DNA from: Ylistrum balloti
Lineage: Eukaryota
Reading direction: 5' to 3'
Length of the DNA: 64,000 nt
Assembly (NCBI RefSeq): GCF_031769215.1
Contig: NW_026782006.1
Span: forward strand, 806,001 to 870,000
A program made the translations under genes and the position numbers. Shown here in pieces: positions 579-63,169 of the stretch. Under the pieces are notes generated by a model that was not told where the DNA came from, ran no database searches, and worked only from the letters and a program-made list of their open reading frames with translations. How positions within the stretch are numbered: position 1 is the stretch's first letter; every line of letters begins with the position of its first letter.

Positions 579-714
579 TAATTGATTTGATAAATCTCCA
601 TGTTTCGTTTGTTTAGTATATGATGTTTCTAACCATAATGATATTTTTGTTGGAAGTTGACAATAAATTCTTTTGTTTGCTGACGGTGTACTTACTACAC
701 TATTTCTGTTGTAG

Positions 715-16100: not shown

Positions 16101-16249
16101 ATGTATCATTCTTTAACCAGATAAGTTTAAGGTCGTAATATTTTTTATGATAAAAAACTTACATACTCTTCAGAAGCAGCTAAAACAGCAAGGGACTTCA
16201 GAAGAACCACCAGCGACAAAGTCTTGAACAGGTTGTACACGATCGCCAT
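10147..16249 (-). CDS. Paralogue A: secreted cubilin-NTD-like / He_PIG Ig-like / EGF / F5-8C (discoidin) protein, ~366 aa
   Basis: Exons 16249-16167 (signal peptide MAIVYNLFKTLSLVVLLKSLAVLAASE), 15815-15749, 14743-14651, 14293-14192, 12800-12611 (DPEGGQVTYSVVAGALPPGVALDSTLG..FTIRATD), 12091-11978 (6-Cys EGF), 11711-11547, 11278-11145, 10299-10147 (ARYVRFVP..PCMRVDLQGC*). All junctions GT-AG and phase-compatible; exon sizes match the paralogues. Confidence 0.88.
14925..15425. repeat. ~60-bp minisatellite (~8 copies) in intron 2 of A
   Basis: Unit GACTTATGTAGGAACAAACATTGGACATGGAGTTTATGGAGACTTAAAATAATAAATGTC. Confidence 0.93.
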
Positions 16250-17490
16250 CTTGAATTATAGTCACATTCAGCGTCGTTTTCCCCTGGAGACCCAAGATAC
16301 CGTTATCTCTAAGTAGCTGTATATATACCGTCTCAGTACATAAAGAATTAAAGATCCACGTCCAGATTTTCCTTTCAAAATAGATTTAATTAGGAAATGT
16401 AAACAGTATGAATATCCTTAACTAATTATTTTTATCATACATAATTTTATCTATTGACAAATGGAAGTTAAATAGATAGAGGAGTTAACGAGAATCTACA
16501 AAGGCGATAAGTTTGCTTTTTAGAAACTACCGAATTTGCTATTTCAAACAACATATGACACGTGGTTTCGGATGAAAGATTTATGGAAAAATCGTTTTTC
16601 AGTATTTGCACTTTTTTGATGGGATTATTTTTACTCGTATAAGGAAGATGATATAACAATACAAATTATAAGAAGTAAAAAATGTACTTTATGTGTACTT
16701 TTTATGCTAATATGGTGCTCAAAGGTATACGTGTTGATGGTGTGGCCTTTTTATCTAAGGTTACAAATAAGCCTGTGTCATCATGCATGTTTCTGTTGCA
16801 GCATTATTGCACCAAATTTGCATGTTTTGGGTTGGTCCTGGGCAAGCTGACCCAATTCCAACCGAAGACCAGAAACAGGGGCATTTATACATTAAAGGAT
16901 TTAATTTAAATCTATCTTTCTAGTGATTATCAGTACTGTTTGCCACATAATTCCTCTTTACACACAAAAAAACACGCACCTGTGGAATTCGACTTGAACA
17001 AATCTGAACATCCATGAAGGCGTCAAATAAATGTATTAATTCCAGTATCTCTAAAATGTGAAAGTCACCTTCACTGCACCCGTTATAGACAAAATTAATG
17101 TTTTGTTAAGTAAACATTTAATGCGATAAAAATAAACAAACGTTGCTTAACTGAACAAAAATCATCAGTTGAGCTTAAAGATAGAATTGCAAAATAAGAA
17201 GAAAACAAAATGGAAGAAAGAAAGAAAAACAAAAATATATAAATGATGCAACAAAATTATGATGCTGAGGCACTTAAGATTATTGTGTTATTTTGTTTTA
17301 CATGTATTTTAAAGTGTAAAAAAAATCTATGTACTTTTATATTGATGTCCATTTTCGGCGATCACTTTGTATTTAGTAGCAACAGAAGTCACGTGATATA
17401 TCAAGCCATGTATGTCAGCTAAACATTTCAGTAGATTGTACAAGGAAACTTATCGCTAGGTCCCAACACCACTCAACATCTCGAAACAAA
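16250..17490. promoter_or_regulatory. Putative bidirectional promoter region between divergent genes A and B
   Basis: Inferred from divergent start codons 1242 bp apart; a palindromic E-box (gTCACGTGAt) lies about 100 bp upstream of the B ATG. Confidence 0.5.
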
Positions 17491-20400
17491 ATGGCGGCTA
17501 TCAAAACAACGTGCCTCGTGCTGTGTTTCATTCCTTACACTATAGCAAGGTAATGTATATTGTTTTATTTTATTTATCGTTCAGAACATCTGGTTTACCT
17601 ATATTGTCGTGCAACAAGTCAGGTGAATAAAAAAAGAAAGAAGAAAAAATACAACATAATGTCATTTTAGAGCGACTTAGTTGTTAAAGTTGATAAGAAC
17701 CAATGAACAAACATGTATAACGTCGTCTTCGTTTCGAAGTAGCATACGATCGGCTAATTGTACTCAAAACCAAAGGCAATTCTCTAAACGGAACATCATT
17801 TGGAAGATATTTACTTTTAGTACTGAAAAGAATGAGTATAGTTTTCATGTACAGTTGTAAATGTACCATCTAAATCAAGTTTATCACTGTTTTCTAAATA
17901 TTGCTGTAAAATAGATATTAGTAACTTACGATAATGTTTCGACAGGTATATCCATTGCTGATCTAGACTGTACATAAATAGATGTTGAATGTCACTTGTG
18001 GATTTGTTTTCTCTGTGTTCAGAACATATTGCAATATGATACTTTGCTTTGTTTAAAAGTTTTTTTGAGATACAATACCCGAATGTGTTGGTGACAGCCG
18101 AGACGGGTGGTAACCTGACTGTTGAGGTAGGTGTATAGACACAGGCGAAATATAACCTTATCATATATACTTATAATACAGCTGTTTTAAAATGACAATA
18201 TGCAAGTGTCTCCATAGGAGTGATTTCTCTCGTTAATTCAAAATATATTTATCAGACTACATGCATCAGCATTTGGGTTTTTACCATTTCGAAAGTTCAT
18301 ACGATATCTATGCAATTTAATGATTATCATATGATATCTATGTAGTTTAATCATTCTAAAGAATGTTTTCACAACACGCAAATATATGAAGTGGTGAAAC
18401 AGTTAAGCAGATGACTCCGTTATTTTAAGTCCATCAAACCATTATCGTTATAAGATATCATTATACAGGCAGGACCACAAGGTGGGAATATCATAATGAA
18501 ACCCACTGGTAATGGAACAGTCTATATTGGTAAGACCGACATGCTGAAACTCTTTGAGGTAATTGTCTATATCATTTGAGTATACTTTATCATATCATGT
18601 ATGTAGAAAATTTAAGATAAAGATAAATGCTTCAAAATAAATTCGTAAAAACAACGAAACAATTTTTAAGATTAAATGTTCAATTTCACTGATTGTTACA
18701 CCATGCTGAACATAAAGCCTTGTAGAGGATCTTGTGACAATCTTTACATCATAACAATTAGGTGTATATAAAAGGTAGGTTATCACCTTTCATTTTATAA
18801 TTGGTAAATTATCATCTTTTCAGTTTATAATTGGTAGGTTATCACCTTTCAGTTTATAATTGGTAGGTTATCATCTTTTCATTTTATAATTGGTAGGTTA
18901 TCATCTTTTCAGTTTATAATTGGTATGTTATCACCTTTCATTTTATAATTGGTATGTTATCACCTTTCATTTTATAATTGGTAGGTTATCATCTTTTCAG
19001 TTTATAATTGGTAGGTTATCATCTTTTCAGTTTATAATTGGTAGGTTATCACATTTCAGTTAATAATTGGTAGGTTATCACTTTTTCATTTAATAATTGG
19101 TAGGTAATAACCTTTTCAGTTTATAATTGATAAGTTATCATCTTTCTGTATATAACAGACAGGTTATCACCTTTTTAGTTTATAATTGGTAGGTTATCAT
19201 CTTTTCAGTTTATAATTGGTAGATTATCATCTTTCCCTATATAACAGACAGGTTATTGCCTTTCAGATCGTCAACAGCATGCCTCCAGTGTGGGAACTGA
19301 ATGCTGTTCATGGTTCTCTGGGCACGTTTCTGGGAGGAGCTTCTATTTCACTGAATGTTGAAGCTGTGGTATGTTTGTCCTTCCCAAGATCGCCACTTCA
19401 GGAATAATTCATTGTTATGTTCTGTCTCTTTTTTCCGGTTTTATGTTCGACTTTGGTACAAAGTGTCACTGGTTTGGAACGGAAACATATACACACCTAA
19501 CATTCTTTCTGACGGAGCCTATGTACAAAATTAATCACGATTGATTTAATCATGGTTAAAGTCAGTCTCGATATCATATCTGGATTCAAATAGAACAAAT
19601 CAGTTATACAATCCAGTGTCGTTCCCTGTAGTATTTAATAATGAATTCTTATCAAAATGAATAATGTACATGCGATGTCTATGGAACACTACCCCTTTTA
19701 ATGAATTGCTCATCTTAATTAATGATAATCTCCATATTACGGGTCGAGAACGCAAACGCCATCGGAATAGAAATCATAATTGAATTTTAAAACTTTTTTT
19801 TCTATTAAATCAGTATTTTTCAAGGAAAATTTATCAAGAGTTTAAGAGATGGGCTTAACATATTTTATTGTAGGATCCTGAAGGAGGTTCATTAAAATAT
19901 GAGAAGGTCTCTGGTGCTTTGCCTCCTGGTGTTCATCTCAACAAAAACACTGGACAGATATCCGGTACAGCCCCGGATGTAGACGCTACCTATCAATTCG
20001 GTATCCGGGTAACAGACAAGCACGGAAAATATGCCGACAAAATTTTCTCTATAGACACTAGAGGTCTGTTTCTTGATTAAAACAAAAACAATTAAAATCA
20101 GAATGATTTATTGTACAACCACGTCTAACAGATCGTTTTTGTGTTATTTCTTACTTGTTAGGAAACATAGGCCTTTTGGTTGAAAATCGTTATTTTCTCT
20201 GTTATAATAGGTTTAAGATTTGTTTCTAGTGTAACATAATGTCTTTATTGATATTATTTCCATGTGATGTAATATTACTCAATGGATTCTATTTAAAAAT
20301 ATCCTTATCTATAACCTGATTTAATTTCACCTTTAACTTGTTGTTTGATAAATATATCTACACGTTCGTAATAGCTTGTGGTTTCTTTCAGATAACAACC

Positions 20401-21697
20401 AGTGCTTGAGTAACCCGTGTACTCATGGAGGAACATGTGTGGATGATATTGACCATTTCATTTGTACTTGTCAGCAACACTATGGCGGGAAGACATGTGC
20501 TACCAGTAAGTCTACAGCGTACCGTCTGTAAACTTGTTACAACCCACACTTCATGCTTGCTCGGAATTTAAGACTAGACGCACTGAGAAATTCAATTAAA
20601 TTCAAATGATTTAACGATTGTTCCATATCACAACTCATTAATTCAAACAAAATACAATGGTGTGTAATTTTACTATCACTTGAGAAATTAAAGTCTGTTG
20701 TTCAAATATCGGAGTATGTATACGTGTAAATATAAGTCTTGTTTGGGAAATAAACGTTTGCGTTTTAACACAAAAGCATGAAATAACATTGTATTATCTA
20801 TGTGTGACAGACTGTGCGAGTCATGCATTAGGTGTGGACCAGAGAAGTAAGACAATACCTGACGCACAGATGTCCGCTCACTACTCATACGGCGACCATC
20901 CAGCCTCCGACGGACGTCTAAACGCTCCTCAAGGCTGGATCGGACAGAACACAGCCTCTTGGCTACAGGTTAACTGATTTGTAACTTAGAAGATTGAACA
21001 AAGGACACAAAGAACAAGAGAAATATAGCATTAAAGAAACTACGTGCTGATATTTCTTCATTTTAGTACTCATTATTGTCAGTAGTGAATAATTTCAAAA
21101 GACCGGCAATCCTCGGAGACGTAGGTGTTTAAAAAGTAATTGGATTATCGCACATTTCATGTTGATTTCAATGTGTATGGTTAAACAATAAATGGTAGTT
21201 ATGATTCAGGTGGATCTTGGTGATGTCATGGAAGTACACGCAGTCGCTACCCAAGGGTACACATCGACTTACTACACGTCAGAGTACCAACTACTGTACA
21301 GTTCCGACGGGAACAGCTTTGTGAACACTAAGAATGGAACGGACAATATGGTAGGCTGATCACACTAAAATATATTGAACATTTCTATGTTGGTATTCTT
21401 GCCTGATCAGTGTTAAAGCCTAGCGAGGCAGATAGTTTGTAACACATATATGCATATTGGCAATATGCCAAATATCTATTAAATAGAAAGAATAATATAA
21501 ATGTTTCTTTCATCTATTTTTATGTTTTAAATTTTATCTCATTGTAGGTGTACAGCGGAAGTTCGAATGTCAACACCGTTACCAAACACGTGTTAACGTC
21601 TCCACTTCGGGCTCGCTTCATCAGATTCCAGCCTGTCACATTCAATAGTTATCCGGGCATGCGCGTTGAGGTTTACGGATGCGAGATTAATTCGTAG
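17491..21697 (+). CDS. Paralogue B: secreted cubilin-NTD-like / He_PIG Ig-like / EGF / F5-8C protein, ~356 aa
   Basis: Exons 17491-17549 (MAAIKTTCLVLCFIPYTIA), 18060-18126, 18469-18558, 19267-19368, 19874-20063, 20392-20505 (DNNQCLSNPCTHGGTCVDDIDHFICTC..C), 20811-20968, 21210-21350, 21548-21697 (RARFIRFQP..GMRVEVYGC). GT-AG junctions, continuous frame, AATAAA at 21754. Confidence 0.9.
18775..19266. repeat. ~29-30-bp minisatellite (~16 copies) ending at the acceptor of B exon 4
   Basis: Unit GGTTATCATCTTTTCAGTTTATAATTGGTA. Confidence 0.93.
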
Positions 21698-21753
21698 CCA
21701 ATGTCGATTCATTCATACAAATGATCTGTTATTTGTTTTAGTTGTAATATCAG

Positions 21754-21759
21754 AATAAA
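21754..21759 (+). promoter_or_regulatory. Candidate polyadenylation signal of gene B
   Basis: AATAAA 57 nt after the stop codon. Confidence 0.5.
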
Positions 21760-21899
21760 CGGAGTATGTTAAAATGATTGCATCCGCTGCATTTATTATG
21801 AATTTATAATAACATTGTATTAATATGAATTTACATTCATGAAAAAAAATACTTTCATTCTCAATACTTAAAGGCCCAGAGTGCTGTTGTTCAAATGAA

Positions 21900-23400
21900 T
21901 GATATTAACAAACTGTCAAGTTCAGATGGGTCAAACACGTTAAAATGGAAATTCAAAAGACTTCCTCTCATTAGCTAAAAGACCAAGAGTGTTTATATTG
22001 GGCTTGTTGGATTGAACTGCCACCGAATTTCTTAAAATAAATGACCTTGTCCCGCTTTCAAAGTCACAGGGCTCAAATGTGTTATTTTTGAAAATGACTT
22101 CTTTCCCCAACGTCACATGGTGCTCATATTGTTCAATTAGCATACTGGGATCAAGTATTGATTCAACAAGTCATAGGTCCTGTATCATGGTATTTGTGAA
22201 GTAGCATGTATATGGAATAGATTTCAAGTTTGTAGAAATTGACTTTATGAACCAACAAGTAGTCTTAGTATGCCACAGAACACGTGAACATTTAAAACAT
22301 GTTGGGTTTTATCATATATAGAAGTCTTTACAATAAGATGAAAAAGTAAGTGTTGCTGAATGATGTAGTTGTCCACCTTTCTATGTGCTGATATTCACTG
22401 TGTGAGAATTTCTCGCTGGCATACAGGACAAGGACTTCTACATATCCCTTTTAATGCTAGCTAATCGTGCTTCAATATTACAGTCTTTCCGGTAATCTTT
22501 CATAATAAAGAAGTGTGGAATCCATGCAATATTTTATTGCCTTATTGGTTACTTTCTCTACCCAACCTTTATCTGAGATCCTTATTTTAGTTTTTCAGTC
22601 CAGGTCACTAAGCCATAAGTTGATTGCACAGAATATTTATTTTGAAAAGCTCCGAAAGACTACTGATGATCAATAAGGTTCTCTCGCCAAGATCTTTTTA
22701 CTTACTGGGATTAACCAAAATTTTGTGCTTTTTCAGGAGTGTCCTTGTAATTCTTATTATTGCTTATATTTTGTCCTAGATTGGTTGGCTTTGAGTTTCC
22801 GGGATGATTATTATGTTGACGTGTATTTTGTTTCTTTAAAAATATTTGTTTTTTTTTTCAAACTGTGAATTCCGAGCTTCATAAACATCTCAAACGCCAG
22901 TATAATGTTTTCTTTATCTTGGCCTTAACGTATTCTTTTATGCTGACTTGTATTGTTTTGTACGAGAATTAATTGATCCATGATTTCTTGCCATTAAACA
23001 AAAGATGTGAGGGATGTTGATCAATGACGAATACATGAAAGGTTTGTATCTTTTACGATCTCATTTAAAATCGTTCCTTGTTTTATATAATTTTCTAGGT
23101 GTCAGATGCTCATCATCTTATTGATCTGGCTTTGATTTTGAGTACGTGATATTTCTCCGTTGTATATGATGTCCTCGTTTAAGAAGAACTTGCATTATCC
23201 TCCCAGGATACATGGCATTATTAGCACCGCAATTGTGCAAGGTTTACGTTTTTTTACCTCCTTTTCTCAATCACTTTTGCATTACAATTAAACTTTTGCT
23301 GACATGTTAAGATTCTGTTACGATTACGTAAGGCTGCTCTCGAAATCTTTTCCAAAGCTCAAACCCCATTTTTTGCACTATTAAATCAGTCTCACAGTGT
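21900..23400 (-). mobile_element. Possible highly decayed Penelope-like retroelement remnant
   Basis: Only scattered weak motifs on the minus strand: GKRFREQP (~23340) and SGTRSFILRNS (~22040, compare SGVNQMWILKNS). Motif spacing is imperfect. Confidence 0.3.
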
Positions 23401-25077
23401 TAATGTTTACGGGAAAAGTGGAATAATGATATCTTGATTTTATAACAATCGAAAAAGCTTCCTACCAATCTCTTACAAAACTCTGTTCGAAAGATATTTT
23501 TTCTGTACAAACAGTTTTTTTTTACATCAATCATAGGTGAACGGTGGTACAAATATATGTTTGTGAATCATACTTAAGTGTCTTTCGTAAAAATAGTCCT
23601 AATCATATTCGGAGGACTAAGTCATAAAAGCCGACGGAATCCCTTGTCGACAATATACACGACTGTGTCCCTCACTTGCTTTTGCTTTCATATGGGACTG
23701 AATTTATAGGAGAATATATCGAGTAACGGAGACTTCAATTTCACCTATTGATGATGTGTTGTGTTTCAGTTACAAGATATTTATTACTATGTATATTCGC
23801 ACAAGCACTCAAAATCATCGACATGACAGCCTCTTCTACACAAGCTGTGTACCTTCTTACAGAGAAATCAATTTGTTTTGCATTTCCATATTATTATTTT
23901 TTCCATTTCTGGATAGCAACGTGCTTGCATCCCCATCTATTATATTAAGATATTGCTATTTTGATATTCAAGGGCCAAAATTACGATTTTCGTTCAAGAT
24001 GTCGGCCACTTAAAGACATATTTACAATACAGGGTTTCGAAAGATGCAGGTTGATGAGGTTTATTGACGTCATAATGATCTCGTGAATATTCATTGTGTT
24101 TACTTGGGCAATACGAAAATGGACGTGTTTGATGCTCTTTAGTATTCGTGACGATTTCGTTGTTGTTTGCATTGTTCTCGTTCGGGAACGTGACATTACT
24201 CACTTGGATTGACCAATACTTATATGGCAGGTGTCGAAGATCAAGTTGGAGATACTTTCCCTTCTGGTCCTATTCTCCTTGTACTTTATCACGAGTCTCC
24301 GTGTAAATCTTTCTTTTCTGTTGTCTTGTCGCCATTTTTGTGGGGTTTTTTTTTATCTAATACTCTATATTTATATTTAAATACAAGCCGATATCAAATA
24401 GAGCTGAAACCTCATTATACTGACATCATATCTTATTTTCCCTACATCGTTCAATGAAATTAGGCATATCAAAACTTCATCTGTTTATTGCCAAGTGTAT
24501 TTTTTTATCTGAATTATGTCAGAGGACGCCCACCAAAATAATTACTTCACACGGAAATATATAAACTGATGTGGACTTAAAGTCTCTACTAATGCGTACC
24601 CAGCATCTCGTGTTCACCTCTTTTTTCCATAAAAAGAGGACTGAATAATTCATTATATATTGGTTACTCCTGGCTCCATTCCTTTGGTGCTATAATCACC
24701 AAACAGCATAAATAAATTTATCTGACTTCAATCCCATTATCATAACGTCACAGGTATTTAGTGGATGTGATAATAGCTTATCATGTCCTACATAATATAA
24801 GTGTCCTCATTAGCAAAAATAATTAAAACGCGTATGGCTGTGATGGAGGAGTGAAGCCGGATCTTTGTGTGGTAAAAGAAATATTCCATGAAAATATTAA
24901 ATATTTAACCACTTGTGAAATATCTGTACTGCTAAATAAGTTATCGAAGAAAACCTTTTAAAAAAAAGCTGGTATGAGATAAAGAATAAACTGTTCAAAG
25001 TTTTTGTATATTTGTTTATATTTGTGATAATGTCACATCACCTTTCCACATAAAACTCAGATTAAGACAGCAGAGAC

Positions 25078-28000
25078 CTAAAGCCAGCAGCCATACATTT
25101 CCACCTGAAAGCAGGGATGGTAACTTCTTTCGTAGGTCGTCGGGTGGATCCTGACAAAACGTGCTTCTAACGGTTCAGGCAACGTCTGGTATAATGCACT
25201 TATTGATCCCATAAAAGTCTGTAATGAATAAACTTAAACATGTATCGAGAAATCAATTGTGATTATAATGAGGCAAATACGATAATATATTTGTATTGTA
25301 TTGAATACGACGCAGCAATACATATTTAGTAAGAACCTCCTCCACTCAGATTTTCAATGTTAAAAATTAAGGAAAAACATTGTTAAATGACTTGTCTTTC
25401 ATTCAATGTTCTCATTGTATGATATCAGATTCGATGTAAGCGCCCTTGTCCATCCACCAGTTGGTTCGACTTCTTTTTCCGCACTATTTATAGAATAGAT
25501 GTATTCAGATGCCATCCAGGGTTTCATCGAAGAATCCTTAGGTCCTGTTACTTTCCAGTACTGCCTTTTAGTATTCATTATTAATTACTTATACCTACTT
25601 CGACTACACAATTTAATATCTTTTATCCCTCTGTAATTTTATAAATGTTCTTTATATGAGATAAACCTGTGTTATATGCAGAGATAATACATAAATCCTT
25701 CTTTCGTTTTCAAAGTTAGAGTCTTATTTGTTAAGGATTAGAACATTGCTGTGTGGGAAAAGATGGAATGTTGTTGCTATTGGAGAATGAATGATATTAT
25801 CAAGGTCAAATATGTGACCTTTAGTTGTTGAAGATTTAAGAGAAGAGACATTACTGCCTTTGCTACAGGGAAAACCATTGTTTCTAGATATTTGACAAAA
25901 TATTGACAAGAGAGAACATGCAAGTGAAAGCTTATTTAGTTTTAACAACAGAATATTTAAATGTACGTGAATAAATCCAAGGTTATATTGAAAAGTAATG
26001 GAAAGGTTATGTTGAAATGCAATGAAGAAGCTTATTGATTGTACACTGTGTGAAAATGTTAGGAAAATGAAACAAACATCAAACATTCCGATATTATCTA
26101 CTCACGTGCACAGTGGTGTTATTTACATCGTTGATAGAGTTGAAGGTGGTTCCGTCAGTACTGTAGGATAATGTATATGTTTTCGCAAAGAAGGTAGAAT
26201 TTGCCCCAGATGTTACTATTCGAAAGAGCTTTGCTAAGCCACCTGATAAAAGCAATAATAATCCATACCCTACTTTCCAGTTTGATTCTAGTTTATTGGA
26301 TATTTTACAAATATTATAGACAAATTTAAGTTTGTTCAATAAACCATTAACATATATAATAGAGTGCATAATATATATATAGTAATGATTTGGTAATGAT
26401 TTTGTATATGAAATTATATTAAATCAACTGTTGTGACGTCAGAAGATGATACTTAAATGATGCCACTGATTCGATGAATGCATTATGACGTCATCATGAA
26501 AATTATAGCAATAGAAATCTGTAAATCGTGAATTTGATGAAAAAACTTTGATTTCCATTTTGATTTTAAGTAATTGAAACAAAATGATCACTTCAGCTAA
26601 CCTCTAAAACCCTCTCAGACTTATCTAATAAATCCATATGGAACGCGGAAATTCAATCACGATCCGCTATCTAACAGCATGACGGTTGTAAAATGTTGGC
26701 AAATTATTAACATTACCTAGATCCACTTGTAACCAGGAGTTGGCGTTTTCACCACACCAATACTTTCCAGATTCTGACAAACGCCCGTCTGATGCCTGAG
26801 AGGTATATCGAGACAGGTAAGCGCTCAGCTGTGCGTCTGGGACTACAGAAGAGTTTGCTATTCCAAGAGCAGTCTTATTACACGCTAGGTAAAACAAAAA
26901 TTAAAATCAGCTGTTATATCTGTAGAGCATCGTTCTTATGTTTCATTATCAGATACTTGTAACTGGAAAGTAAGTCAACACAACAAAATGAACTATTTAT
27001 AGATACGGAGGCAATGACAGGACATACTCACTGACATCACAAGTCGGCCCGCCGTACTCCAATGGACAAGAACACGAGAATCCACGATGGGTATTAGTGT
27101 TGTTACACTGGCCATTGTTGTGACACATCTCTCGGAGACACTGATCGACCTCTGAGTAAAAGTCAACAAATCATATTTCACAATAATGGTGTTGTTGTTT
27201 AAACGTATTTATACATAAGCCGATAAAATGCTATTTTCATTCTGTATCAAAGGTAGGAAATAATGCTTGTGTACCTAAACTTTTTCTCAGTTTTTTAAAC
27301 GAAATAATTTATTTCAGGAACAGAATAGACAAGAAAACTGACAAAAAATACATTTTGTGTAAATACAACCACTCAATATTCTCCCGCCGATTAAAAGCCA
27401 ATGCATCAATAATGTATACACCTATCGATCTCCTCTAAATCCTTATAGCTTCATCTTAATATCTATTGTTAGTATCTACAGGTATATTGTCTCTATCTTG
27501 ATAACCATACCTAATGTTTCTACCTTAATAACCATACCTAATGTTTCTACCTTAATAACCATACCTTATATTTCTACCTTAATAAACTTATCTATTGTTT
27601 TTTCCTTGATATCCATACCTCATGTTTCTACCTTAATAACCATACTTAATGTTTCTACCTTAATTACCATACCTAATGTTTCTACCTTAATAACCATACT
27701 TAATGTTTCTACCTTAATTACCATACCTAATGTTTCTACCTTAATAAACCTACCTAATGTTTCTACCTTAATTACCATACCTAATGTTTCTACCTTAATA
27801 ACCATACCTTATATTTCTACCTTAATAAACTTATCTATTGTTTTTTCCTTGATAACCATACCTAATGTTTCTACCTTAATAACCATACCTAATGTTTCTA
27901 CCTTAATAACCATACCTTATATTTCTACCTTAATAAACTTATCTATTGTTTTTTCCTTGATATCCATACCTCATGTTTCTACCTTAATAACCATACTTAA

Positions 28001-31000
28001 TGTTTCTACCTTAATTACCATACCTAATGTTTCTACCTTAATAACCATACTTAATGTTTCTACCTTAATTACCATACCTAATGTTTCTACCTTAATAAAC
28101 CTACCTAATGTTTCTACCTTAATTACCATACCTAATGTTTCTACCTTAATAACCATACCTTATATTTCTACCTTAATAAACTTATCTATTGTTTTTTCCT
28201 TGATATCCATACCTCATGTTTCTACCTTAATAACCATACTTAATGTTTCTACCTTAATTACCATACTTAATGTTTCTACCTTAATAACCATACCTATTGT
28301 TTCTACCTTAATTACCATACCTAATGTTTCTACCTTAATTACCATACCTAATGTTTCTACCTTATTAACCCTACCTAATGTTTCTACCTTAATAACCCTA
28401 ACTAATGTTTCTACCTTAATTACCATACCTATTGTTTCTACCTTACTAACCCTACCTAATGTTTCTACCTTAATAACCCTAACTAATGTTTCTACCTTAA
28501 TTACCATACCTAATGTTTCTACCTTACTAACCCTAACTAATGTTTCTACCTTAATTACCATACCTAATGTTTCTACCTTAATTACCATACCTCATGTTTC
28601 TACCTTAATTACCATACCTAATGTTTCTACCTTAATAACCCTAACTAATGTTTCTACCTTAATTACCATACCTATTGTTTCTACCTTAATTACCATACCT
28701 CATGTTTCTACCTTAATTACCATACCTAATGTTTCTACCTTAATTACCATACCTAATGTTTCTACCTTAATTACCATACCTAATGTTTCTACCTTAATTA
28801 CCATACCTAATGTTTCTACCTTAATTACCATACCTCATGTTTCTACCTTAATAACCATACCTAATGTTTCTACCTTAATATCCACACCTAATATTTCTAC
28901 CTTAATAAACTTATCTATTGTTTTTTCCTTAATATCCATACCTCATGTTTCTACCTTAATAACCATACTTAATGTTTCTACCTTAATAAACCTACCTAAT
29001 GTTTCTACCTTAATTACCATACCTAATGTTTCTACCTTAATAACTCTACCTAATGTTTCTACCTTAATTACCATACCTAATGTTTCTACCTTAATTACCA
29101 TACCTAATGTTTCTACCTTAATAAACCTACCTAATGTTTCTACCTTAATTACCATACCTCATGTTTCTACCTTAATAACCCTACCTAACGTTTTCTACCT
29201 TAATAACCCTACCTAACGTTTTCTACCTTAATAACCCTACCTAACGTTTCTACCTTAATTACCATACCTAATGTCTCTACTTTGATTACCATACCTAATG
29301 TTTTTACCTTAACAACCATACCTAATGTTTCTACCTTAATTACCATACCTAATGTTTCTACCTCAATTACCATACCTCATGTTTCTACCTTAATAACCCT
29401 ACCTAACGTTTTCTACCTTAATAACCCTACCTAACGTTTCTACCTTAATTACCATACCTAATGTCTCTACTTTGATTACCATACCTAATATTTTTACCTT
29501 AACAACCATACCTAATATTTCTATCTTGAACACTGCATCGGCGTACTGGTCACTGGCATCGATAGCGCGGATAGTGAATGTGTAGATGGCGTCTTCATCC
29601 GGAGGAATACCTTGGATACGCCAGGGATTGCTCGCTATACTTAGACCAGTGGGGAAATTTCCGGCCACAAGTTCAAACCTGACATCCTGACTCTCTGGGT
29701 CCTGTGAAGACAGGAATGATGTTCTCAAACTCAAAAAGTGAGCAAATTTACATATCAATTATCCCCATTTAAAGTTTTCGTGTACAGTATATACGTATGT
29801 AACCAAAAAGGTTTCACTTTCCCAACATAGATTTGAGTCGGGATAATGCCGTTTTTTCATTTCTGGAAAAAATATCCCTTGTTTCTATGGCTTGATGTAA
29901 GGACTACTGCCAAAAATCAATCTTTACATTGCTGATGTTGATATCGTTTACGTGTTATTATTGTCATTTTTTATCGTATATATATTCATTTAGAAAATTT
30001 AAATGACTTGCAGTTTAGTTACCAACACTTCCAGGGGAATCATTATGTTACTGGCACCCTCAAACGTCCCTGAGTACCCGACATGTCCGTGGAAGTGCCA
30101 AATGGGCGGCATATTGTTGATGATCACTGGAAACAGCTGATGAACATTAAGAACCAGACGTATGAGCTTTCTATTTGCCCATCTTTGATACTTTAATAAG
30201 TTAATGACGACATCAATGAATCCTTGTGAACTATCTAATTTGGTACCGTTTATCATTATTTCATACACTTTCGCCCTTGAATATATATACACTTCAAGTT
30301 TAATTAAATTGACTAAAGATGGATTGATGTGATGAAGTGATTAATGTTACCTCCTTAAACATCTACTTATAAAACCGTTCAAATATATATATAATGAAGA
30401 ATATATTAATTATATTGCAGAAGATAAAACAAGTAATGTCTATATAGTATAAACAGAGATATGTGTGACATGGCCGTGACTAGCACGGTAAGGCCAGAGA
30501 TATGTGTGACATGGCCGTGACTAGCACGGTACAGCCAGAGATATGTGTGACATGGCCGTGACTAGCACGGTTCAGACAGATATATGTGACATGGCCGTGA
30601 CTAGCACGGTACAGACAGATATATGTGTGACATGGCCGTGACTAGCACGGTACAGCCAGAGATATATGTGACATGGTCGTGACTAGCACGGTACAGGCAG
30701 ATATATGTGTGACACGGCCGTGACTAGCACGGTACAGACAGAGATATGTGACATGGCCGTGACTAGCACGGTACAGCCAGAGATATGTGTGACATGGCCG
30801 AGACTAGCACGGTTCAGCCAGATATATGTGTGACAAGGCCGTGACTAGCACGGTACAGCCAGAGATATGTGTGACATGGCCGTGACTAGCACGGTTCAGA
30901 CAGATATATGTGACATGGCCGTGACTAGCACGGTACAGCCAGAGATATGTGTGACATGGCCGTGACTAGCACGGTTCAGCCAGATATATGTGTGACATGG

Positions 31001-32809
31001 CCGTGACTAGCACGGTACAGCCAGAGATATTTGTGACATGGTCGTGACTAGCACGGTACAGACAGAGATATGTGTGACATGGTCGTGACTAGCACGGTAC
31101 AGCCAGATATATGTGTGACATGGCCGTGACTAGCACGGTACAGCCAGATGTATGTGTGACATGACCGTGACTACTACGGTACAGCCAGAGATATGTGTGA
31201 CATGGCCGTGACTAGCACGGTTCAGACAGATATATGTGTGACATGGCCGTGACTAGCACGGTACAGCCAGATATATGTGTGACATGGCCGTGACTAACAC
31301 GGTACAGCCAGAGATATGTGTGACATGGCCGTGACTAGCACGGTACAGCCAGATATATGTGTGACATGGTCGTGACTAGCACGGTAAGGCCAGAGATATG
31401 TGTGACATGGCCGTGACTAGCATGGTACAGACAGATATATGTGTGACATGGCCGTGACTAGCACGGTACAGCCAGAGATATATGTGACATGGCCGTGACT
31501 AGCACGGTATATACACTATTATCGTCATCAAATTATAAAATAAATGTACACAAGTCGCCATCCTATATTTTCAGAATGTCAGGCTCTGATGTTAGAATTC
31601 TGCCATCATTAACGCATTCGGAATAACAATTATCAGCTTTACTAGACCGAGTTCAGTAGTGGTATACCTACATCTATAATCTCCAACACATCATAGCCAT
31701 CAAATAGAACTGTCCCTGATCCGTTCTTCACTGGCTGGATGTGGATGTCCCCATTCTCTCCAGACTAAAAAAATAATTAAATGATAACCATTGGTGTAAG
31801 ATTACTTATATTACAATATGAATTGTCATGCTTTCTTTAAACAAAACTGATAATATCCTAATTTATTTGATAAAGTGATTTTATCAGGGTATACTCTTCG
31901 CTATATCAACTAAGATAAATTTTATCAATGTAGATATTCGTATGTTTCTATCCATGGCCATTTATTTGTACATCACATTGTCTTTTCAGCGTTTATCGTG
32001 ATAGACACTTTCATTGATCCAGAATTTCCCTTACCTGTCCCAAAAGAGTTCCATTATCCTGGGCTGCTATAGCTACGTTTGGAAAGTCCAACTGAAGCAC
32101 ACTAATCACAGCCGTTGTAATGATATCATTTAGACATAACACGTTTACAATGTTTAAGGTACATCTATTTTTGATATAATATAACATATAATTCAATAAT
32201 ATCTTATATTACATTAGAGTGTGATATGCTTATATTTGCATAACAGGAAACGGAAATGAGTTGTCTAAATATGGTTTGGAACAAAATGATGTCATTCCGG
32301 GTGTGTCTTCCGTCACGTGTCACACACCTATGGGAAGTCAAATTGTGTCCGGGGGATCGATACCGCAGCCATTTTGTTACTTGCCTATGCTGATAGATTG
32401 TTTATAAAAGAGGAAAGGCATACTGTGAAATAATTAAGAAATAACGATATCGGTTACTTAGCAAATCAAAGTTATTTTACCATGTTAATGATATAATTCA
32501 ATATTTTAAAATTTTGATATAAAAACGAATTTGCACGATGTATGTTATTTCAAATCACCGTTACATTGTTCCTCATGAAGGTCAAGATGTCTTCTTGCCA
32601 TCATGTTATATCGACATTCCCTATGACGTCATTTCCGCCTAGAAAATGTGTTACATAGTTGTATGTCAATGTCACGTCAGTGAGCTGAATCCGGATGTAT
32701 AAAATGATAAAAAAAAACATACTTACTCGCCCGGAGTCCCGGCAATGGCTAAAGTAATTATACATGAAAATATGTATGTAAGTCTTAGATTCAATGTCAT
32801 ATCCGCCAT
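25078..32809 (-). CDS. Paralogue C: secreted cubilin-NTD-like / He_PIG Ig-like / EGF / F5-8C protein, ~370 aa
   Basis: Exons 32809-32727, 32101-32035, 31764-31672, 30136-30023 (acceptor uncertain, see findings), 29701-29512, 27151-27032 (EGF), 26884-26717, 26242-26106, 25218-25078 (EARFVRIHP..PCFQVEMYGCWL*). Phases match the paralogues. Confidence 0.85.
27497..29525. repeat. 27-bp minisatellite (~75 copies) starting at the donor of C exon 5
   Basis: Unit ACCATACCTAATGTTTCTACCTTAATT/A, with a 351-bp higher-order duplication. Confidence 0.97.
30453..31508. repeat. ~41-bp minisatellite (~25 copies) with an internal inverted repeat, intron 3 of C
   Basis: Unit GATATGTGTGACATGGCCGTGACTAGCACGGTACAGCCAGA. 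Confidence 0.97.
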
Positions 32810-34063
32810 ATCGTTCGTCAGATCAAGCTGAAGCTGAACATGACCATTATACCTGCATAGTTGTGTAGGCAGTGGTGGCACCAGCAGTTATGTGTCGGCT
32901 CTGGAATGTAAACACCGTAACCTTCAATAGGATTTACCTGAATTTACCCCCATTTGTTTCAGTGCTGGCGCTTACTATCACTGATTCCTTCAAATGTTTT
33001 ATAAAAGTAATCACAACTCGAGATAAAGACCCAAAATCATAACAGTGTTCCTTTTCCTCTATATTTCTCCTCAAGTTAAACTCATCCTCATCACTCATGG
33101 TGCCGTCATGTCGCATAGAAGAGTATAATAAACAATTCTACTTCTTTCTTTAATCAAAGGTTAAACTTATACTATAATCAGCCGGTTTGTTCAAGTAGTG
33201 TAAAAGTTTTAGATATTTACAAAACCAACAGAGATGGATTGATACTCGGTTAAGTTAAAATAAATATACCTAGCAACAATGCTAGATTCTTATTAAATAA
33301 GGCTAGAGTAAACGATGACGGCACATCACAAATTTTACAAAGGAAGGAATACGTGTGGTTACTCAGTATCAGTCTGTAGAATAAGTCCTATAGCATCTGT
33401 ATTAAAGGGTACTTATAGAAACGAGTGGAGTAACAATTAGTTTATCACGGTAGAGCTGGATTTCAAACATTCAAAGCTGACTTACAGGGCATACCGATAT
33501 CAAAGGGTGACTGGACAAAGTCTGACAAATATGGGCGCAAACTTTGTAAGCATCGGTAGCAAATAGTAAATAGAATATCCTTTAGTAGATAAAAAATGGG
33601 GTTATGTTATCTGTTTACACGCATTTATAATCGTTACCTTTCATTCAACAGTGCCATTAATTTGGTTTAATCAGCAATATGATAAAAAAACAACAGAAAC
33701 TGATGAAACACCAGGCAAACAGAAAAACATGTCTAGTCACAGAACAAACAAGGAATCACGCTACGTGTAACGGACATCTAAAACCAGGAAGTTCCAACGC
33801 GAGGCCCTTGTTTATCTATGTCCGTCATTGCTGTGTGTCCGTTGTTAGGTTACGTAGAATCCGAAGCACGATACAGGTGTAAATGACGCCCATGGATTAA
33901 CCTGCTATAGAACGATAAATGGATCAAATCTTCTCTCAAACTTAGGTCACCACTTAGCGTTGCTATGATAACACTGAAATCGAGCAATTGCCTCCTCCGC
34001 CAAAACCTGCCTGGGTAACTGTCTAAAGAAACAGTTTCCGGTGACTTAAGAAAGAAATCCATC
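32810..34063. promoter_or_regulatory. Putative bidirectional promoter region between divergent genes C and D
   Basis: Inferred from divergent start codons 1255 bp apart. Confidence 0.5.
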
Positions 34064-37000
34064 ATGGCGGCATTGTATGCAGTATTCATTTTATTGCCAA
34101 CAATTGTCACATCCAGGTGAGAGAATATCTCAGAAAATATTCAATGTATCGTTCCTGATATTCGAATGGCGTTGTCTGGTTAAAATGTGACCTTTATTTT
34201 ACAGTTTTTTCCAAGTAAACTATCCAAACGTAAATATATCGTCGGAACCGAACGGGGATTTGATCTTTGAGGTAAGTCTTGTTGTTTGCATTTCCTTTCC
34301 AAAATTCAGTTCCTTTTTCATTTGGTTCGACATTAAAATGTTTATCTATTATCAACAAAGTGAAAAAGAAATAATTAAATGCCAGGGATATATTTTGAGT
34401 TTGTCTAAGCTGTTCTAACATTTGAATATTAATTCGATTTGAGGTCAGTAGCAAGTGTTTCTCTGCTCTGCTTGTCAAAATGTTTGACGAATATCTCTCT
34501 CCTGTTATTGCTATCAATAATTCAATACATATCTGCATTTTTATCTTAAATCGATGTGAAACTTTCAGGCTGGCAAAGGGGGCGATGTCATTCTAAAGCC
34601 TGGTGCTGGAGGAACTGTCTACATAGCTGGCAGAGACCTGAGAAAATTTATCCAGGCATGTTGATTATAAAACCTTATCTTATACTTGTATAGGGGCAAT
34701 ATAATTTATCTGATCATTAAATTATTGGTTTTATCATGGGAGTGGTATGGAAGTTCGATGCTGTGATATAAAGCTTAGCTCGATAGTTGAGAAAATGTAT
34801 GATATATTGGATGTGTAATTCGAAATCAAGTGCGTTAATACATATTTCATTTATTTTTTCAGTTTTTGAAATATTCAGCTACACTCTCTAATAAAATGTT
34901 CAACATTTTTATAAACTTTACATTTAATTCAATAAAATTATTGAACGGAGTAGAAATATCACATCCATGTTTATGCTATATACAGAAAGTGAAAAGCCTG
35001 CCTCCTATATGGACAAAGCAGTCAGTTCACGGGTCTTTGGGTACGTTCAGCTCCGGTAACTCCATCTCTGTATCAGTGGAGGCAAAGGTATGTTTTCATT
35101 CGTAAAGTGTTCGCTGCTGTAATACATCTTGTAGAAATATAATGGTCAATTTGTAAATGAGATACCTACAATTATACAAGTTTGAAAGTATATGTTGAAA
35201 GCTTAGCTCCTCTGGAAAGTTATTCAGTACAAAAATGTTACAAGAATATCGATGTCTAGCTGTTGAAATTGTATCTATTCAACAGACATACGATACATTA
35301 ATACAAACTTACATGTTTAAAATGTGACTTTTTTAACCGTGGAAGGACCCGGATGGTCAAAGCATTGTGTATGAATTGGTGTCGGGTCATCTTCCTCCCG
35401 GAACTACACTGAATAACGCCACCGGAGTGATCTCTGGAAGTGCTCCCGATGTGGATGCTACCTACCACTTTGAAATTCGCGCCACTGACGTTCACGGGAA
35501 ATATGCTGACGGGTCCTTCAGCATCAGTATCCGAGGTTTGTTTCAGTTAACTTGATACCAACACATCAGAGACATGTGACAAAGGAAGATTTCAATTTAA
35601 AATGAAAACGAAATAAACGATATACCTGAATGAAACATATAAACTGACTCTATATATAGAGTATCCCATTTCGTTTAAAATGAACCTTTTTCATTTGAAA
35701 AAAATACTGAGGAGTAGCATACATCATAACACAAAACGCATATGACGCAATGAAGTTTAGGTGTCATGATGTAAACAACGGGAACCTACAATCAATCACT
35801 GCTCCGCTCTGTACCTAATATTTAATCAAGTTATTGGCATCTTTACACTGATAGTAAGGTAGTCAGGTGATCTATTAACAAGTATCTTTACACTAATAGA
35901 ATGGTAGTTATATTATCAATTAGCAAGTATCTTTACACTGATAGTATGGTAGTTATGTTATCAATTAGCAGGTATCTTTACACTGATAGTATGGTAGTTA
36001 TGTTATCAATTAGCAGGTATCTTTACACTGATAGTATGGTAGTTATGTTATCAATTAGCAGGTATCTTTACACTGATAGTATGGTAGTTATGTTATCAAT
36101 TAGCAGGTATCTTTACACTGATAGTATGGTAGTTATGTTATCAATTAGCAGGTATCTTTACACTGATAGTATTGTAGTTATGTTATCAATTAGCAGGTAT
36201 CTTTACACTGATAGTATGGTAGTTATGTTATCAATTAGCAGGTATCTTTACACTGATAGTATGGTAGTTATGTTATCAATTAGCAGGTATCTTTACACTG
36301 ATAGTATGGTAGTTATGTTATCAATTAGCAGGTATCTTTACACTGATAGTATGGTAGTTATGTTATCAATTAGCAGGTATCTTTACACTGATAGTATGGT
36401 AGTTATGTTATCAATTAGCAGGGATAGTATTGTAGTTATGTTATCAATTAGCAGGTATCTTTACACTGATAGTATGGTAGTTATGTTATCAATTAGCAGG
36501 TATCTTTACACTGATAGTATTGTAGTTATGTTATCAATTAGCAGGGATAGTATTGTAGTTATGTTATCAATTAGCAGGTATCTTTACACTGATAGTATGG
36601 TAGTTATGTTATCAATTAGCAGGTATCTTTACACTGATAGTATGGTAGTTATGTTATCAATTAGCAGGTATCTTTACACTGATAGTATGGTAGTTATGTT
36701 ATCAATTAGCAGGTATCTTTACACTGATAGTATTGTAGTTATGTTATCAATTAGCAGGGATAGTATTGTAGTTATGTTATCAATTAGCAGGTATCTTTAC
36801 ACTGATAGTATGGTAGTTATGTTATCAATTAGCAGGTATCTTTACACTGATAGTATGGTAGTTATGTTATCAATTAGCAGGTATCTTTACACTGATAGTA
36901 TGGTAGTTATGTTATCAATTAGCAGGTATCTTTACACTGATAGTATTGTAGTTATGTTATCAATTAGCAGGTATCTTTACACTGATAGTATGGTAGTTAT

Positions 37001-43000: not shown

Positions 43001-43444
43001 CATCTTACTATACACTAACCTACCAAGTCACTTACAGTCGCGATGGCAACATCTTCACGAACGCAACTGGTGCCAGCGGAAATGTGAGTTGTTCCTTTCT
43101 TCAGCTTTGAAGTAACTTCACTGCGTTAAAATTATTTTTCTTTTTTTTCTAATTTGTTATAATCATCATTGAGGCTTACAATAATGTTATGATCGACATA
43201 CTGAAATAACTGGTTTAGAAATCCATACTTTTTGTACTAGAAATCATAAATATATAATCCAGATAAACAATAAATTAGATTCTATTTTAAATTGCAGATT
43301 TTTTCCGCGAGTGCGAGTTACGACAGCATAATTAAACATGACTTGATGACGCCAGTTGTTGCCCGATTTGTCCGCTTCTATCCAAGATTGTGGCACACAG
43401 GAGGCAAGCCTGGACTCAGAGTGGAGGTGTACGGCTGCTACTGA
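34064..43444 (+). CDS. Paralogue D: secreted cubilin-NTD-like / He_PIG Ig-like / EGF / F5-8C protein, ~352 aa
   Basis: Exons 34064-34116 (MAALYAVFILLPTIVTS), 34205-34271, 34569-34655 (GC donor), 34986-35087, 35346-35535, 37483-37596 (EGF), 37690-37847, 42943-43083, 43298-43444 (VARFVRFYP..GLRVEVYGCY*). AATAAA at 43458. Confidence 0.88.
35840..37400. repeat. 45-bp minisatellite (~34 copies), very homogeneous, intron 5 of D
   Basis: Unit GATAGTATGGTAGTTATGTTATCAATTAGCAGGTATCTTTACACT. Confidence 0.97.
38092..42872. repeat. 39-bp minisatellite (~4.8 kb), intron 7 of D
   Basis: Unit GAAACTATTTCACTACAAGCCGTTATAACATTTCCCCGC, with truncated units and variable C-runs. Confidence 0.97.
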
Positions 43445-60508: not shown

Positions 60509-60964
60509 TCTTCTCGGCGGTCAAAACAAGCACGTCTGTAAAACTTCCGGCAATTCTCCAGACCTGTCGTTATCCCCGCGATTTTATCCTCGATTTCTCT
60601 GTTGCATAGCAGTATAAGGATTCTAGTTAATGTCTGAGATCAGACGATTTAGACTGGTTCTCGGTTACATTGCTTGACATTAAATATACTGTGTTAGCTC
60701 AGACACAGGATTCTTAACTATGGTGTGTGACTTACGTAAACCAAACAATAGATATTTATATCAATGTTGACAAATGTCTCCCCTCTGACTAACTAACGGT
60801 TAAATTCCCTACCACATCAACTCTGTCTATGACAAACACCGATACTATCGTTACATTAGTAACAAGAATCCCATTTGACTCAGCTTCAGCAACATGTAAA
60901 AGTTTTTATACTGAAATGAAATATAAGAATACAAATGTCTCTAATGAATCTGAGGGTTTAACTA

Positions 60965-62330: not shown

Positions 62331-62344
62331 CCTTAACGAGGTTT

Positions 62345-63112: not shown

Positions 63113-63169
63113 GATCAACAAGACCTTAAAAATGGTTTCAGCTGTAACATGTAAACAGCATAGGTGGCT

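What the first reader, a model, noticed from the sequence alone, without database searches (positions are those of the whole stretch)
16249..34064. Head-to-head two-subtype gene pairs with conserved spacing: a candidate heterotrimer system
Orientation alternates A(-) B(+) C(-) D(+) E(-). A/B start codons are 1242 bp apart and C/D 1255 bp apart, even though intron sizes vary widely. Each pair joins one minus-type gene (93-nt exon 3, late intron 7, extra Cys) with one plus-type gene (87-90-nt exon 3, early intron 7). The duplicated unit was therefore the pair, and its spacing was retained despite heavy protein divergence. With a putative trimerising N-terminus, this resembles the COL4A1/COL4A2 logic: two chains co-expressed from a bidirectional promoter and assembling as heterotrimers. 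The heterotrimer idea is inference.
Basis: partly seen in the sequence, partly recalled or inferred. Interest (0 to 1): 0.8.

Follow-up and report, generated by a model that had tools for sequence, protein, structure and literature searches.

The report
Anciently paired scallop lectin-like genes
Five related scallop genes for secreted Ig–EGF–discoidin proteins fall into two subtypes that sit head-to-head; such pairs also occur in other public assemblies, so the pairing is old and was probably copied as a unit, but the equal 1.25-kb spacing is not conserved and the heterotrimer idea is untested.

Summary
The window carries five intact 9-exon paralogs (352-370 aa) in the order A(-) B(+) C(-) D(+) E(-). 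Each encodes a signal peptide, a 52-aa N-terminal module, He_PIG, EGF and a discoidin domain. The ATG distances are 1242 bp (A/B) and 1255 bp (C/D). Exon 3 is 93 nt in A, C, E and 90/87 nt in B/D. Intron 7 lies 7 nt earlier in B and D.

New evidence supports part of the interpretation. An A-type/B-type head-to-head pair exists in a second assembly, and a C/E-type/D-type pair in a third. The 9-sequence tree is mirrored: (A,sp2m)|(C,E,sp3m) and (B,sp2p)|(D,sp3p). AU tests reject the alternatives that break this pattern. This is what duplication of a pair as a unit predicts.

Other parts are not supported. ATG spacing in the other assemblies is 2977 bp and 241 bp, and the spacers share no sequence, so the near-equal spacing in the window looks coincidental. 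E has no partner. In a fourth assembly the C-type gene has no D-type gene upstream. The extra Cys and the 93-nt exon 3 are not universal. Co-expression could not be tested because no RNA runs were found. The N-terminus shows no detectable similarity to cubilin, and heterotrimer formation remains conjecture.

The parts
10147..16249 (-). Gene A, minus-type, 9 exons, 366 aa. Exons: 16249-16167, 15815-15749, 14743-14651, 14293-14192, 12800-12611, 12091-11978, 11711-11547, 11278-11145, 10299-10147.
   Evidence: Stop-free spliced CDS. It groups with the minus gene of the sp2 pair.
16250..17490 (.). A/B head-to-head spacer. ATG to ATG is 1242 bp, 32% GC.
   Evidence: No similarity to the C/D spacer or to the sp2 spacer.
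17491..21697 (+). Gene B, plus-type, 356 aa. Exons: 17491-17549, 18060-18126, 18469-18558, 19267-19368, 19874-20063, 20392-20505, 20811-20968, 21210-21350, 21548-21697.
   Evidence: Pfam: He_PIG 1.6e-11, EGF 1.3e-9, F5_F8_type_C 1.2e-6 on single exons. Orthologous exon fragments occur in many assemblies.
21698..25077 (.). B/C tail-to-tail spacer. It holds genome-wide repeats at about 21906-22358 and 23416-24321.
   Evidence: Contig depth is up to about 19,700 against a baseline of about 11. This explains the colinear blocks shared with 45290-46120.
25078..32809 (-). Gene C, minus-type, fast-evolving, 370 aa. Exons: 32809-32727, 32101-32035, 31764-31672, 30136-30023, 29701-29512, 27151-27032, 26884-26717, 26242-26106, 25218-25078.
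   Evidence: Its ortholog in sp4 shares the 2-residue longer EGF loop and ..WCGEN.., and lies tail-to-tail with a B-type gene.
32810..34063 (.). C/D head-to-head spacer. ATG to ATG is 1255 bp, 38% GC.
34064..43444 (+). Gene D, plus-type, 352 aa. Exons: 34064-34116, 34205-34271, 34569-34655 (GC donor), 34986-35087, 35346-35535, 37483-37596, 37690-37847, 42943-43083, 43298-43444.
   Evidence: It groups with the sp3 plus gene at 97% support. D-type exon fragments occur in several assemblies.
46346..56361 (-). Gene E, minus-type, unpaired, 360 aa. Exons: 56361-56300 (candidate), 55190-55124, 52032-51940, 50938-50837, 50552-50363, 50156-50043, 49402-49235, 47661-47528, 46498-46346.
   Evidence: It is sister to C and groups with sp3m. 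There are no plus-type exons upstream of it.
56558..64000 (.). Region upstream of E, made almost entirely of minisatellite arrays. No partner gene.

Best explanation
This is a bivalve family of secreted proteins. Each member has a signal peptide, a roughly 52-aa N-terminal module, a He_PIG Ig-like domain, one EGF domain and one discoidin (F5/8 type C) domain.

The ancestral genomic state was a divergently transcribed pair of two paralogous subtypes. That pair was duplicated as a unit into an A/B-type pair and a C/E/D-type pair. This happened before the scallop split from the sources of at least two other public assemblies. Later changes were lineage-specific. In the scallop lineage they include the C/E duplication, which left E without a partner, and heavy minisatellite growth in introns.

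Shown here: the gene structures, the domains, the two subtypes, the mirrored phylogeny, and head-to-head pairs in other assemblies.

Inferred: the pairs persist because the two genes share a bidirectional regulatory region and are co-expressed. This could be because their products act together, for example as a hetero-oligomeric extracellular lectin or adhesion complex.

The near-identity of the two ATG distances in this window (1242 and 1255 bp) is most likely coincidence.
For: - Gene models and domains.
- Five-sequence tree: (A,(B,D)100,(C,E)100).
- sp2 (ENA ERZ25074796, 64 kb plus 9 kb examined): a single head-to-head pair with the same exon plan. The minus gene has a 93-nt exon 3 and a late intron 7. 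The plus gene has a 90-nt exon 3 and an early intron 7. ATG to ATG is 2977 bp.
- sp3 (Logan contigs L009-L016): a compact pair of a C/E-clade minus gene and a D-type plus gene, both with intact ORFs. ATG to ATG is 241 bp, and exon 2 to exon 2 is 671 bp.
- Nine-sequence ML tree: (A,sp2m) 98-99; ((B,sp2p) 95-98,(D,sp3p) 97) 100; (C,(E,sp3m)) 90-92.
- AU tests reject sp3m with A (p=0.005), sp3p outside B+D (p=0.004) and sp2m with C/E (p=0.007).
- Exon fragments of A-, B-, D- and E-type, and a C-like type, occur in other assemblies, so all lineages are old.
- B/C tail-to-tail adjacency is conserved in sp4.
Against: - No expression data could be obtained, so co-regulation is untested.
- No conserved non-coding block was found in any spacer, within or between species.
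- Spacer length ranges from 241 to 2977 bp.
- In sp4 the 4.5 kb upstream of the C-type gene holds the last exon of another minus-type gene in the same orientation and no D-type exons. The C/D pairing is therefore not universal.
- E has no partner.
- In the ML tree sp3m is sister to E, not to C+E. Positional and phylogenetic orthology then agree only if the non-rejected alternative trees (p=0.15 and p=0.09) are true.
- The source species of sp2, sp3 and sp4 are unknown.
- All models are predictions without RNA support. D exon 3 needs a GC donor and E exon 1 is uncertain.
Confidence: 0.62

Rival explanations
1. The two subtypes are obligate partners that assemble through the N-terminal module into heterotrimers (for example 2:1). 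Bidirectional promoters keep their stoichiometry, as for collagen IV chains or Drosophila Cubilin/Cubilin2.
For: - The genomic logic matches collagen IV (own knowledge): two subfamilies, head-to-head pairs, and co-duplication of the pair. This is now backed by the mirrored tree and by pairs in sp2 and sp3.
- The 241-bp ATG distance in sp3 is in the range of true bidirectional promoters.
- Obligate heterotrimers of paralogs joined by an N-terminal intertwined beta-helix are known: cubilin trimer PMC6283879, and Cubn/Cubn2 PMC8710305.
Against: - Nothing shows that the N-terminus trimerises. Exons 2-4 have no Pfam match. An exon-3 profile and the 53-aa N-terminus of B find no cubilin or other trimeric beta-helix in the PDB at E<=10.
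- The module is only about 52 aa and runs straight into the He_PIG domain, with no coiled coil.
- Apart from E (11) and sp2p (9), Cys counts after exon 1 are even, so no consistently unpaired Cys suggests an inter-chain disulfide.
- E is unpaired, and the C-type gene lacks a D-type gene upstream in sp4.
Confidence: 0.15
2. Neutral history. The alternating orientation is left over from inverted and tandem duplications, and the pairs persist only because nothing has broken them. There is no shared promoter and no functional coupling. The 1242/1255 match is chance.
For: - No conserved spacer sequence.
- Spacer length varies 12-fold between pairs.
- E is unpaired, and sp4 has C-type next to another minus-type gene.
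- A second near-match of distances in the same window turned out to be meaningless. The first repeat block lies 1838 bp from the B stop codon and 1846 bp from the D stop codon.
Against: - Head-to-head linkage of one gene of each subtype survived in three genomes in which B versus sp2p is only 63% identical and A versus sp2m only 48%.
- Both members of the pair show congruent duplication history.
- In sp3 the pair is squeezed to 241 bp, which makes independent promoters unlikely.
Confidence: 0.2
3. The duplicated unit was the convergent pair [B+ C-], copied to [D+ E-]. The C/D head-to-head junction would then be a by-product of tandem duplication.
For: - In the five-sequence tree B pairs with D and C with E. 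A+C is rejected (p=0.019).
- Colinear non-coding blocks link 23535-24317 to 45290-46120, at the same offset from the B and D stop codons.
Against: - The blocks are high-copy repeats (depth 50 to about 19,700 against a baseline of 11), so they are not evidence of segmental homology.
- B is closer to sp2p than to D, and D is closer to sp3p, so B/D is an old split.
- In sp3 the D-type gene is head-to-head with a C/E-clade gene and is followed by an unrelated Peptidase_C78 ORF, not by a convergent family gene.
Confidence: 0.05

Closest known systems
Collagen IV gene pairs (COL4A1/A2, A3/A4, A5/A6)
   Same: There are two paralogous subfamilies. Each locus joins one gene of each subfamily head-to-head across a short spacer. 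The pair was duplicated as a unit, which gives mirrored phylogenies. The collagen IV facts are from own knowledge.
   Different: There is no collagenous or NC1 domain. Co-expression and hetero-assembly are not shown. Spacer length is not conserved. One gene (E) is unpaired, and one relative lacks the C/D pairing.
Cubilin N-terminal intertwined beta-helix trimer, and Drosophila Cubilin/Cubilin2 obligate heterotrimers (PMC6283879, PMC8710305)
   Same: Both have a short N-terminal module rich in G-x-hydrophobic beta-strand motifs at the mature N-terminus of a secreted multidomain protein with EGF domains. Paralogs could in principle co-assemble.
   Different: No sequence similarity was detectable. 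There is no coiled coil after the module and there are no CUB domains. No amnionless-like partner was examined. Trimerisation is untested.
EGF-discoidin secreted proteins (MFGE8/lactadherin, EDIL3/Del-1)
   Same: Signal peptide, EGF and F5/8 type C discoidin domain, and no transmembrane segment.
   Different: There is one EGF and one discoidin domain rather than tandem C1-C2. There is an added He_PIG Ig-like domain and a novel N-terminal module. The genes are organised in pairs.
Divergent histone gene pairs (H2A-H2B, H3-H4)
   Same: The genes are divergently transcribed and their linkage is conserved. In histones this serves stoichiometric co-expression of partners in a complex (own knowledge).
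   Different: The histone partners are not recent paralogs of one another in the same sense. Here function and co-expression are unknown.

Membership tests
Collagen-IV-type co-duplicated head-to-head pairs (genomic logic) | Head-to-head orientation of two paralogs across a short spacer | tested here: met
   A/B 1242 bp and C/D 1255 bp; sp2 2977 bp and sp3 241 bp.
Collagen-IV-type co-duplicated head-to-head pairs (genomic logic) | Each pair joins one member of each of two subfamilies | tested here: met
   The plus-type clade has 100% support. The intron-7 position separates the subtypes in the window, sp2 and sp3.
Collagen-IV-type co-duplicated head-to-head pairs (genomic logic) | Mirrored phylogeny, meaning the pair was duplicated as a unit | tested here: met
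   (A,sp2m)|(C,E,sp3m) and (B,sp2p)|(D,sp3p). AU tests reject the three alternatives that break congruence (p<=0.007).
Collagen-IV-type co-duplicated head-to-head pairs (genomic logic) | Shared bidirectional promoter and co-expression | not testable with these tools
   No RNA run holds the locus. No conserved spacer motif was found.
Collagen-IV-type co-duplicated head-to-head pairs (genomic logic) | Products co-assemble as heterotrimers | not testable with these tools
Collagen IV (protein family) | Gly-X-Y triple-helical domain and NC1 domain | tested here: not met
   The translated models have no collagen repeat. Pfam finds only He_PIG, EGF and F5_F8_type_C.
Cubilin-type N-terminal trimerising beta-helix | Sequence similarity to cubilin residues 36-135 | tested here: not met
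   An exon-3 profile and the 53-aa N-terminus of B give no cubilin hit against PDB chains at E<=10. The queries are short, so this is weak negative evidence.
Cubilin-type N-terminal trimerising beta-helix | Beta-helix followed by a trimeric coiled coil (PMC6283879) | tested here: not met
   The module (exons 2-3, about 52 aa) is followed at once by the first strand of He_PIG (exon 4 plus exon 5; one search matches profile positions 32-93, and one search gives the exon-4 alignment).
EGF-discoidin secreted proteins (MFGE8/EDIL3-like) | EGF domain(s) followed by F5/8 type C domain(s) | tested here: met
   EGF 1.3e-9; F5_F8_type_C 1.2e-6 and 1.1e-3 on separate exons.
EGF-discoidin secreted proteins (MFGE8/EDIL3-like) | Tandem C1-C2 discoidin domains and no other domain types | tested here: not met
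   There is a single discoidin domain, plus He_PIG (1.6e-11) and the N-terminal module.

The most novel reading that the evidence does not exclude
The two subtypes are obligate partners of a hetero-oligomeric (possibly heterotrimeric) extracellular discoidin lectin or adhesion complex. It would assemble through the short N-terminal beta-strand module. Its subunit stoichiometry would be maintained by bidirectional promoters that have been co-inherited and co-duplicated since before the compared bivalve lineages split. This would be a non-collagen counterpart of the collagen IV gene-pair system.
Probability: 0.15. Interest if true: 0.75.

Novelty: new member of a known kind. Interest (0 to 1): 0.5.

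Why it matters
Conserved, co-duplicated head-to-head pairs of paralogs are rare. Where they have been studied (collagen IV, histones) they mark subunits that must be made together. This study defines an undescribed bivalve family of secreted He_PIG-EGF-discoidin proteins. Its two subtypes have stayed paired in at least three genomes, and the pair was duplicated as a unit. That gives a concrete, testable prediction of co-regulation and physical partnership for proteins of unknown function. It also provides a very compact natural bidirectional spacer (241 bp in one relative) for promoter work.

Tried and rejected
1. The single search of protein representatives, run with the He_PIG exon profile, returned only giant multi-repeat He_PIG proteins. 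It gave no family members. The query was poorly chosen.
2. Full-length homologs could not be reached. A spliced protein has no reference, and the search for homologous proteins limits candidate length, so only exon-sized fragments were found. No source names or species were attached to them.
3. RNA evidence: the look-up of sequencing runs found only one DNA run, so neither splice sites nor co-expression could be checked.
4. Colinear non-coding blocks between the B/C and D/E tail-to-tail spacers first suggested a [B,C] to [D,E] segmental duplication. Read laying showed that they are high-copy repeats, so this was rejected.
5. Spacer footprinting, comparing A/B with C/D and both with the sp2 spacer, found nothing.
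6. PDB sequence searches for cubilin or sarcoglycan-like similarity of the N-terminal module found nothing.
7. Walking 26 kb downstream of the sp2 plus gene found no C-type gene.
8. A look-up of P0207 failed. L017 starts inside the B-type gene, so it could not show a partner.
9. Literature and accession searches did not identify the family or the source species.
10. Structure prediction was not attempted. The relevant N-terminal region is spliced and could only have been typed in.


Full report
**What is in the window.** Self-comparison of all stop-to-stop ORFs showed five sets of paralogous exons on alternating strands. Using the paralog alignments, conserved intron phases and GT-AG sites, I built five 9-exon models. 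Each translates without an internal stop.

- A(-) 16249..10147, 366 aa
- B(+) 17491..21697, 356 aa
- C(-) 32809..25078, 370 aa
- D(+) 34064..43444, 352 aa
- E(-) about 56361..46346, 360 aa

Two caveats apply to the models. Exon 1 of E is only a candidate (MYLYVICGF..), and exon 3 of D needs a GC donor.

Pfam on single exons gives He_PIG (1.6e-11), EGF (1.3e-9) and F5_F8_type_C (1.2e-6 and 1.1e-3). Exon 1 is a hydrophobic signal-like peptide, and the proteins end just after the discoidin domain. They therefore look like secreted proteins. Exon 4 forms the first strand region of the He_PIG domain, because exon 5 matches profile positions 32-93. The unassigned N-terminal module is therefore only exons 2-3, about 52 aa. 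I did not test that.

- ATG distances are 1242 bp (A/B) and 1255 bp (C/D).
- Exon 3 is 93 nt in A, C and E, 90 nt in B and 87 nt in D.
- Intron 7 is phase 0 after ..WLQ in B and D. It is phase 1, 7 nt later, in A, C and E.
- A, C and E carry an extra Cys (..PC..) in the last exon.
- The wide range of intron sizes is due to minisatellites inside introns.
- A scan of the whole window with exon HMMs found no further family exons. E has no plus-type partner, and its upstream 7.6 kb is almost all satellite arrays.

**Phylogeny within the window.** The ML tree of the five proteins is (A,(B,D)100,(C,E)100). AU tests reject A+C (p=0.019) and A+E (p=0.009). Taken alone, however, it fits a [B,C] to [D,E] duplication as well as a head-to-head unit.

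I found colinear non-coding blocks between the B/C and D/E tail-to-tail spacers that seemed to favour the [B,C] to [D,E] reading. Laying the contigs of the one available DNA run on that stretch showed depths of 50 to about 19,700 against a baseline of about 11. The blocks are dispersed repeats, so this evidence falls. It also shows that distances can match within about 10 bp in this window by accident. The first repeat block lies 1838 bp from the B stop codon and 1846 bp from the D stop codon.

**Relatives elsewhere.** Exon-sized ORF fragments of the He_PIG exon exist in many public assemblies. They sort into A-, B-, D- and E-types, a C-like type, and other minus-type groups. All the lineages are therefore old. 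Three sets of contigs gave genomic context.

- **sp2** (ENA ERZ25074796, contig of 943 kb; 64 kb merged plus 9 kb more examined). It has exactly one head-to-head pair. Exon lengths are [65,67,93,114,193,114,168,134,153] for the minus gene and [59,67,90,102,190,114,170,141,150] for the plus gene. ATG to ATG is 2977 bp. There is no other family exon within 5 kb on one side or 26 kb on the other.
- **sp3** (Logan contigs L009-L016, from several runs). It has a very compact head-to-head pair with intact ORFs. Exon lengths are [62,67,90,102,190,114,168,134,138] and [53,67,87,102,190,114,158,147,144]. ATG to ATG is 241 bp, and the two exon 2s are only 671 bp apart. The plus gene is followed by an unrelated Peptidase_C78 ORF.
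- **sp4** (JGI and ENA contigs L017, L022-L025). This is the closest relative by exon identity. A C-type gene, which shares C's longer EGF loop and ..WCGEN.., lies tail-to-tail with a B-type gene 2.15 kb away, as in the window. The 4.5 kb upstream of its exon 2 holds the last exon of another minus-type gene in the same orientation, and no D-type exons.

**Nine-sequence tree.** The tree has three groups:

- (A,sp2m), support 98-99
- ((B,sp2p) 95-98, (D,sp3p) 97), support 100
- (C,(E,sp3m) 89-94), support 90-92

AU tests reject sp3m with A (p=0.005), sp3p outside B+D (p=0.004) and sp2m with C/E (p=0.007). The tests do not reject sp3m as sister to C+E (p=0.15) or to C (p=0.09).

The sp2 pair is thus orthologous to A/B, and the sp3 pair is a C/E-clade gene with a D ortholog. 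The deep split in the minus subtype, A|(C,E), mirrors the deep split in the plus subtype, B|D. Both splits predate the divergence of the scallop lineage from sp2 and sp3. This is the pattern expected if a head-to-head pair was duplicated as a unit. E is best read as a later extra copy in the C/E lineage. sp3 has one C/E-clade gene, and nothing family-like follows its D-type gene.

**What is not supported.**

- Spacing is not conserved. The values are 241, 1242, 1255 and 2977 bp, and no spacer shares alignable sequence with any other. The near-equality in the window is best treated as coincidence.
- Of the three subtype marks, only the intron-7 position holds everywhere it could be read. sp3m has a 90-nt exon 3, and sp2m and sp3m lack the extra Cys.
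- The C/D pairing is absent from the sp4 contig.
- No RNA run holds the locus, so co-expression is untested.
- For the trimerising N-terminus I found no support. There is no Pfam match and no cubilin or other hit in PDB sequence searches with an exon-3 profile or with the 53-aa N-terminus of B. No coiled coil follows the module, whereas cubilin has a beta-helix plus coiled coil (PMC6283879).
- Obligate heterotrimers of paralogs joined by such a module do exist (Drosophila Cubn/Cubn2, PMC8710305). The idea is therefore legitimate, but here it is only an analogy.

**Verdict.** The most likely account is an old, co-duplicated, divergently transcribed pair of two subtypes of a secreted He_PIG-EGF-discoidin protein. 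Shared regulation is a reasonable inference, especially given the 241-bp spacer in sp3. Hetero-oligomer formation is a testable conjecture, which I put at about 15% for heterotrimers specifically. The genomic logic is that of collagen IV gene pairs, but the proteins are unrelated to collagen. I class it as a new member of a known kind of arrangement, in a protein family for which my limited literature searches found no description.

**Limits.** All models are predictions without transcript support. The source species of sp2, sp3 and sp4 are unknown. Full-length database homologs and structure predictions could not be obtained, because spliced proteins cannot be passed by reference.

Noticed in passing
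window 52027-54633, 55177-55768, 27488-29527: Three intronic minisatellite arrays start exactly at an exon border and repeat the splice site itself. The 33-bp unit in E intron 2 carries the exon-3 acceptor (TTGTTGGCAG|GCTGGT) plus a perfect GTAAGT. The 50-bp unit in E intron 1 repeats the exon-2 acceptor and the first exon bases. The 27-bp unit in C intron 5 repeats the exon-5 donor (TTAG|GTATGG) about 75 times. These amount to dozens of decoy splice sites next to real ones.
   Followed up: partly
window 21906-22358 and 23869-24321: These segments are high-copy dispersed repeats. Summed contig depth is up to about 474 and about 19,700 against a baseline of about 11 in the one DNA run. A related copy lies at 45290-46120, in the same orientation and at almost the same distance from the D stop codon as from the B stop codon.
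   Followed up: yes
window 34655/34656: Exon 3 of gene D can only keep the reading frame with a GC donor (CAG|GCATGT). The sp3 ortholog uses a normal GT donor at this site. This needs RNA evidence. D could otherwise be mis-spliced or decaying.
   Followed up: partly
window 56558-64000 and 193-3400: Both ends of the window are almost entirely minisatellite arrays with units of 26-69 bp. One array has 117 copies of a 27-bp unit (57047-60185) and another has 50 copies of a 51-bp unit (871-3400).
   Followed up: no
L022:857-982 and L023:7973-8110: In a closer relative (sp4) the order is B-type(+) then C-type(-) then another minus-type gene(-). No D-type gene lies in the 4.5 kb between the other minus-type gene's last exon and the C-type gene's exon 2. 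Cluster content therefore differs between species.
   Followed up: partly
L003:7957-8018 and 9043-9057 (sp2, intron 1 of the plus gene): Weak minus-strand matches to exon 2 (FNINY, SVTVHA, HAQDN) lie inside intron 1 of the sp2 plus gene. They may be remnants of a decayed minus-type exon, or chance.
   Followed up: no
window 21000-25500: The single DNA run that holds this locus differs from the window at roughly 1% of positions, for example 25 differences in a 2.5-kb piece. It is probably another individual or haplotype rather than the assembled one.
   Followed up: no
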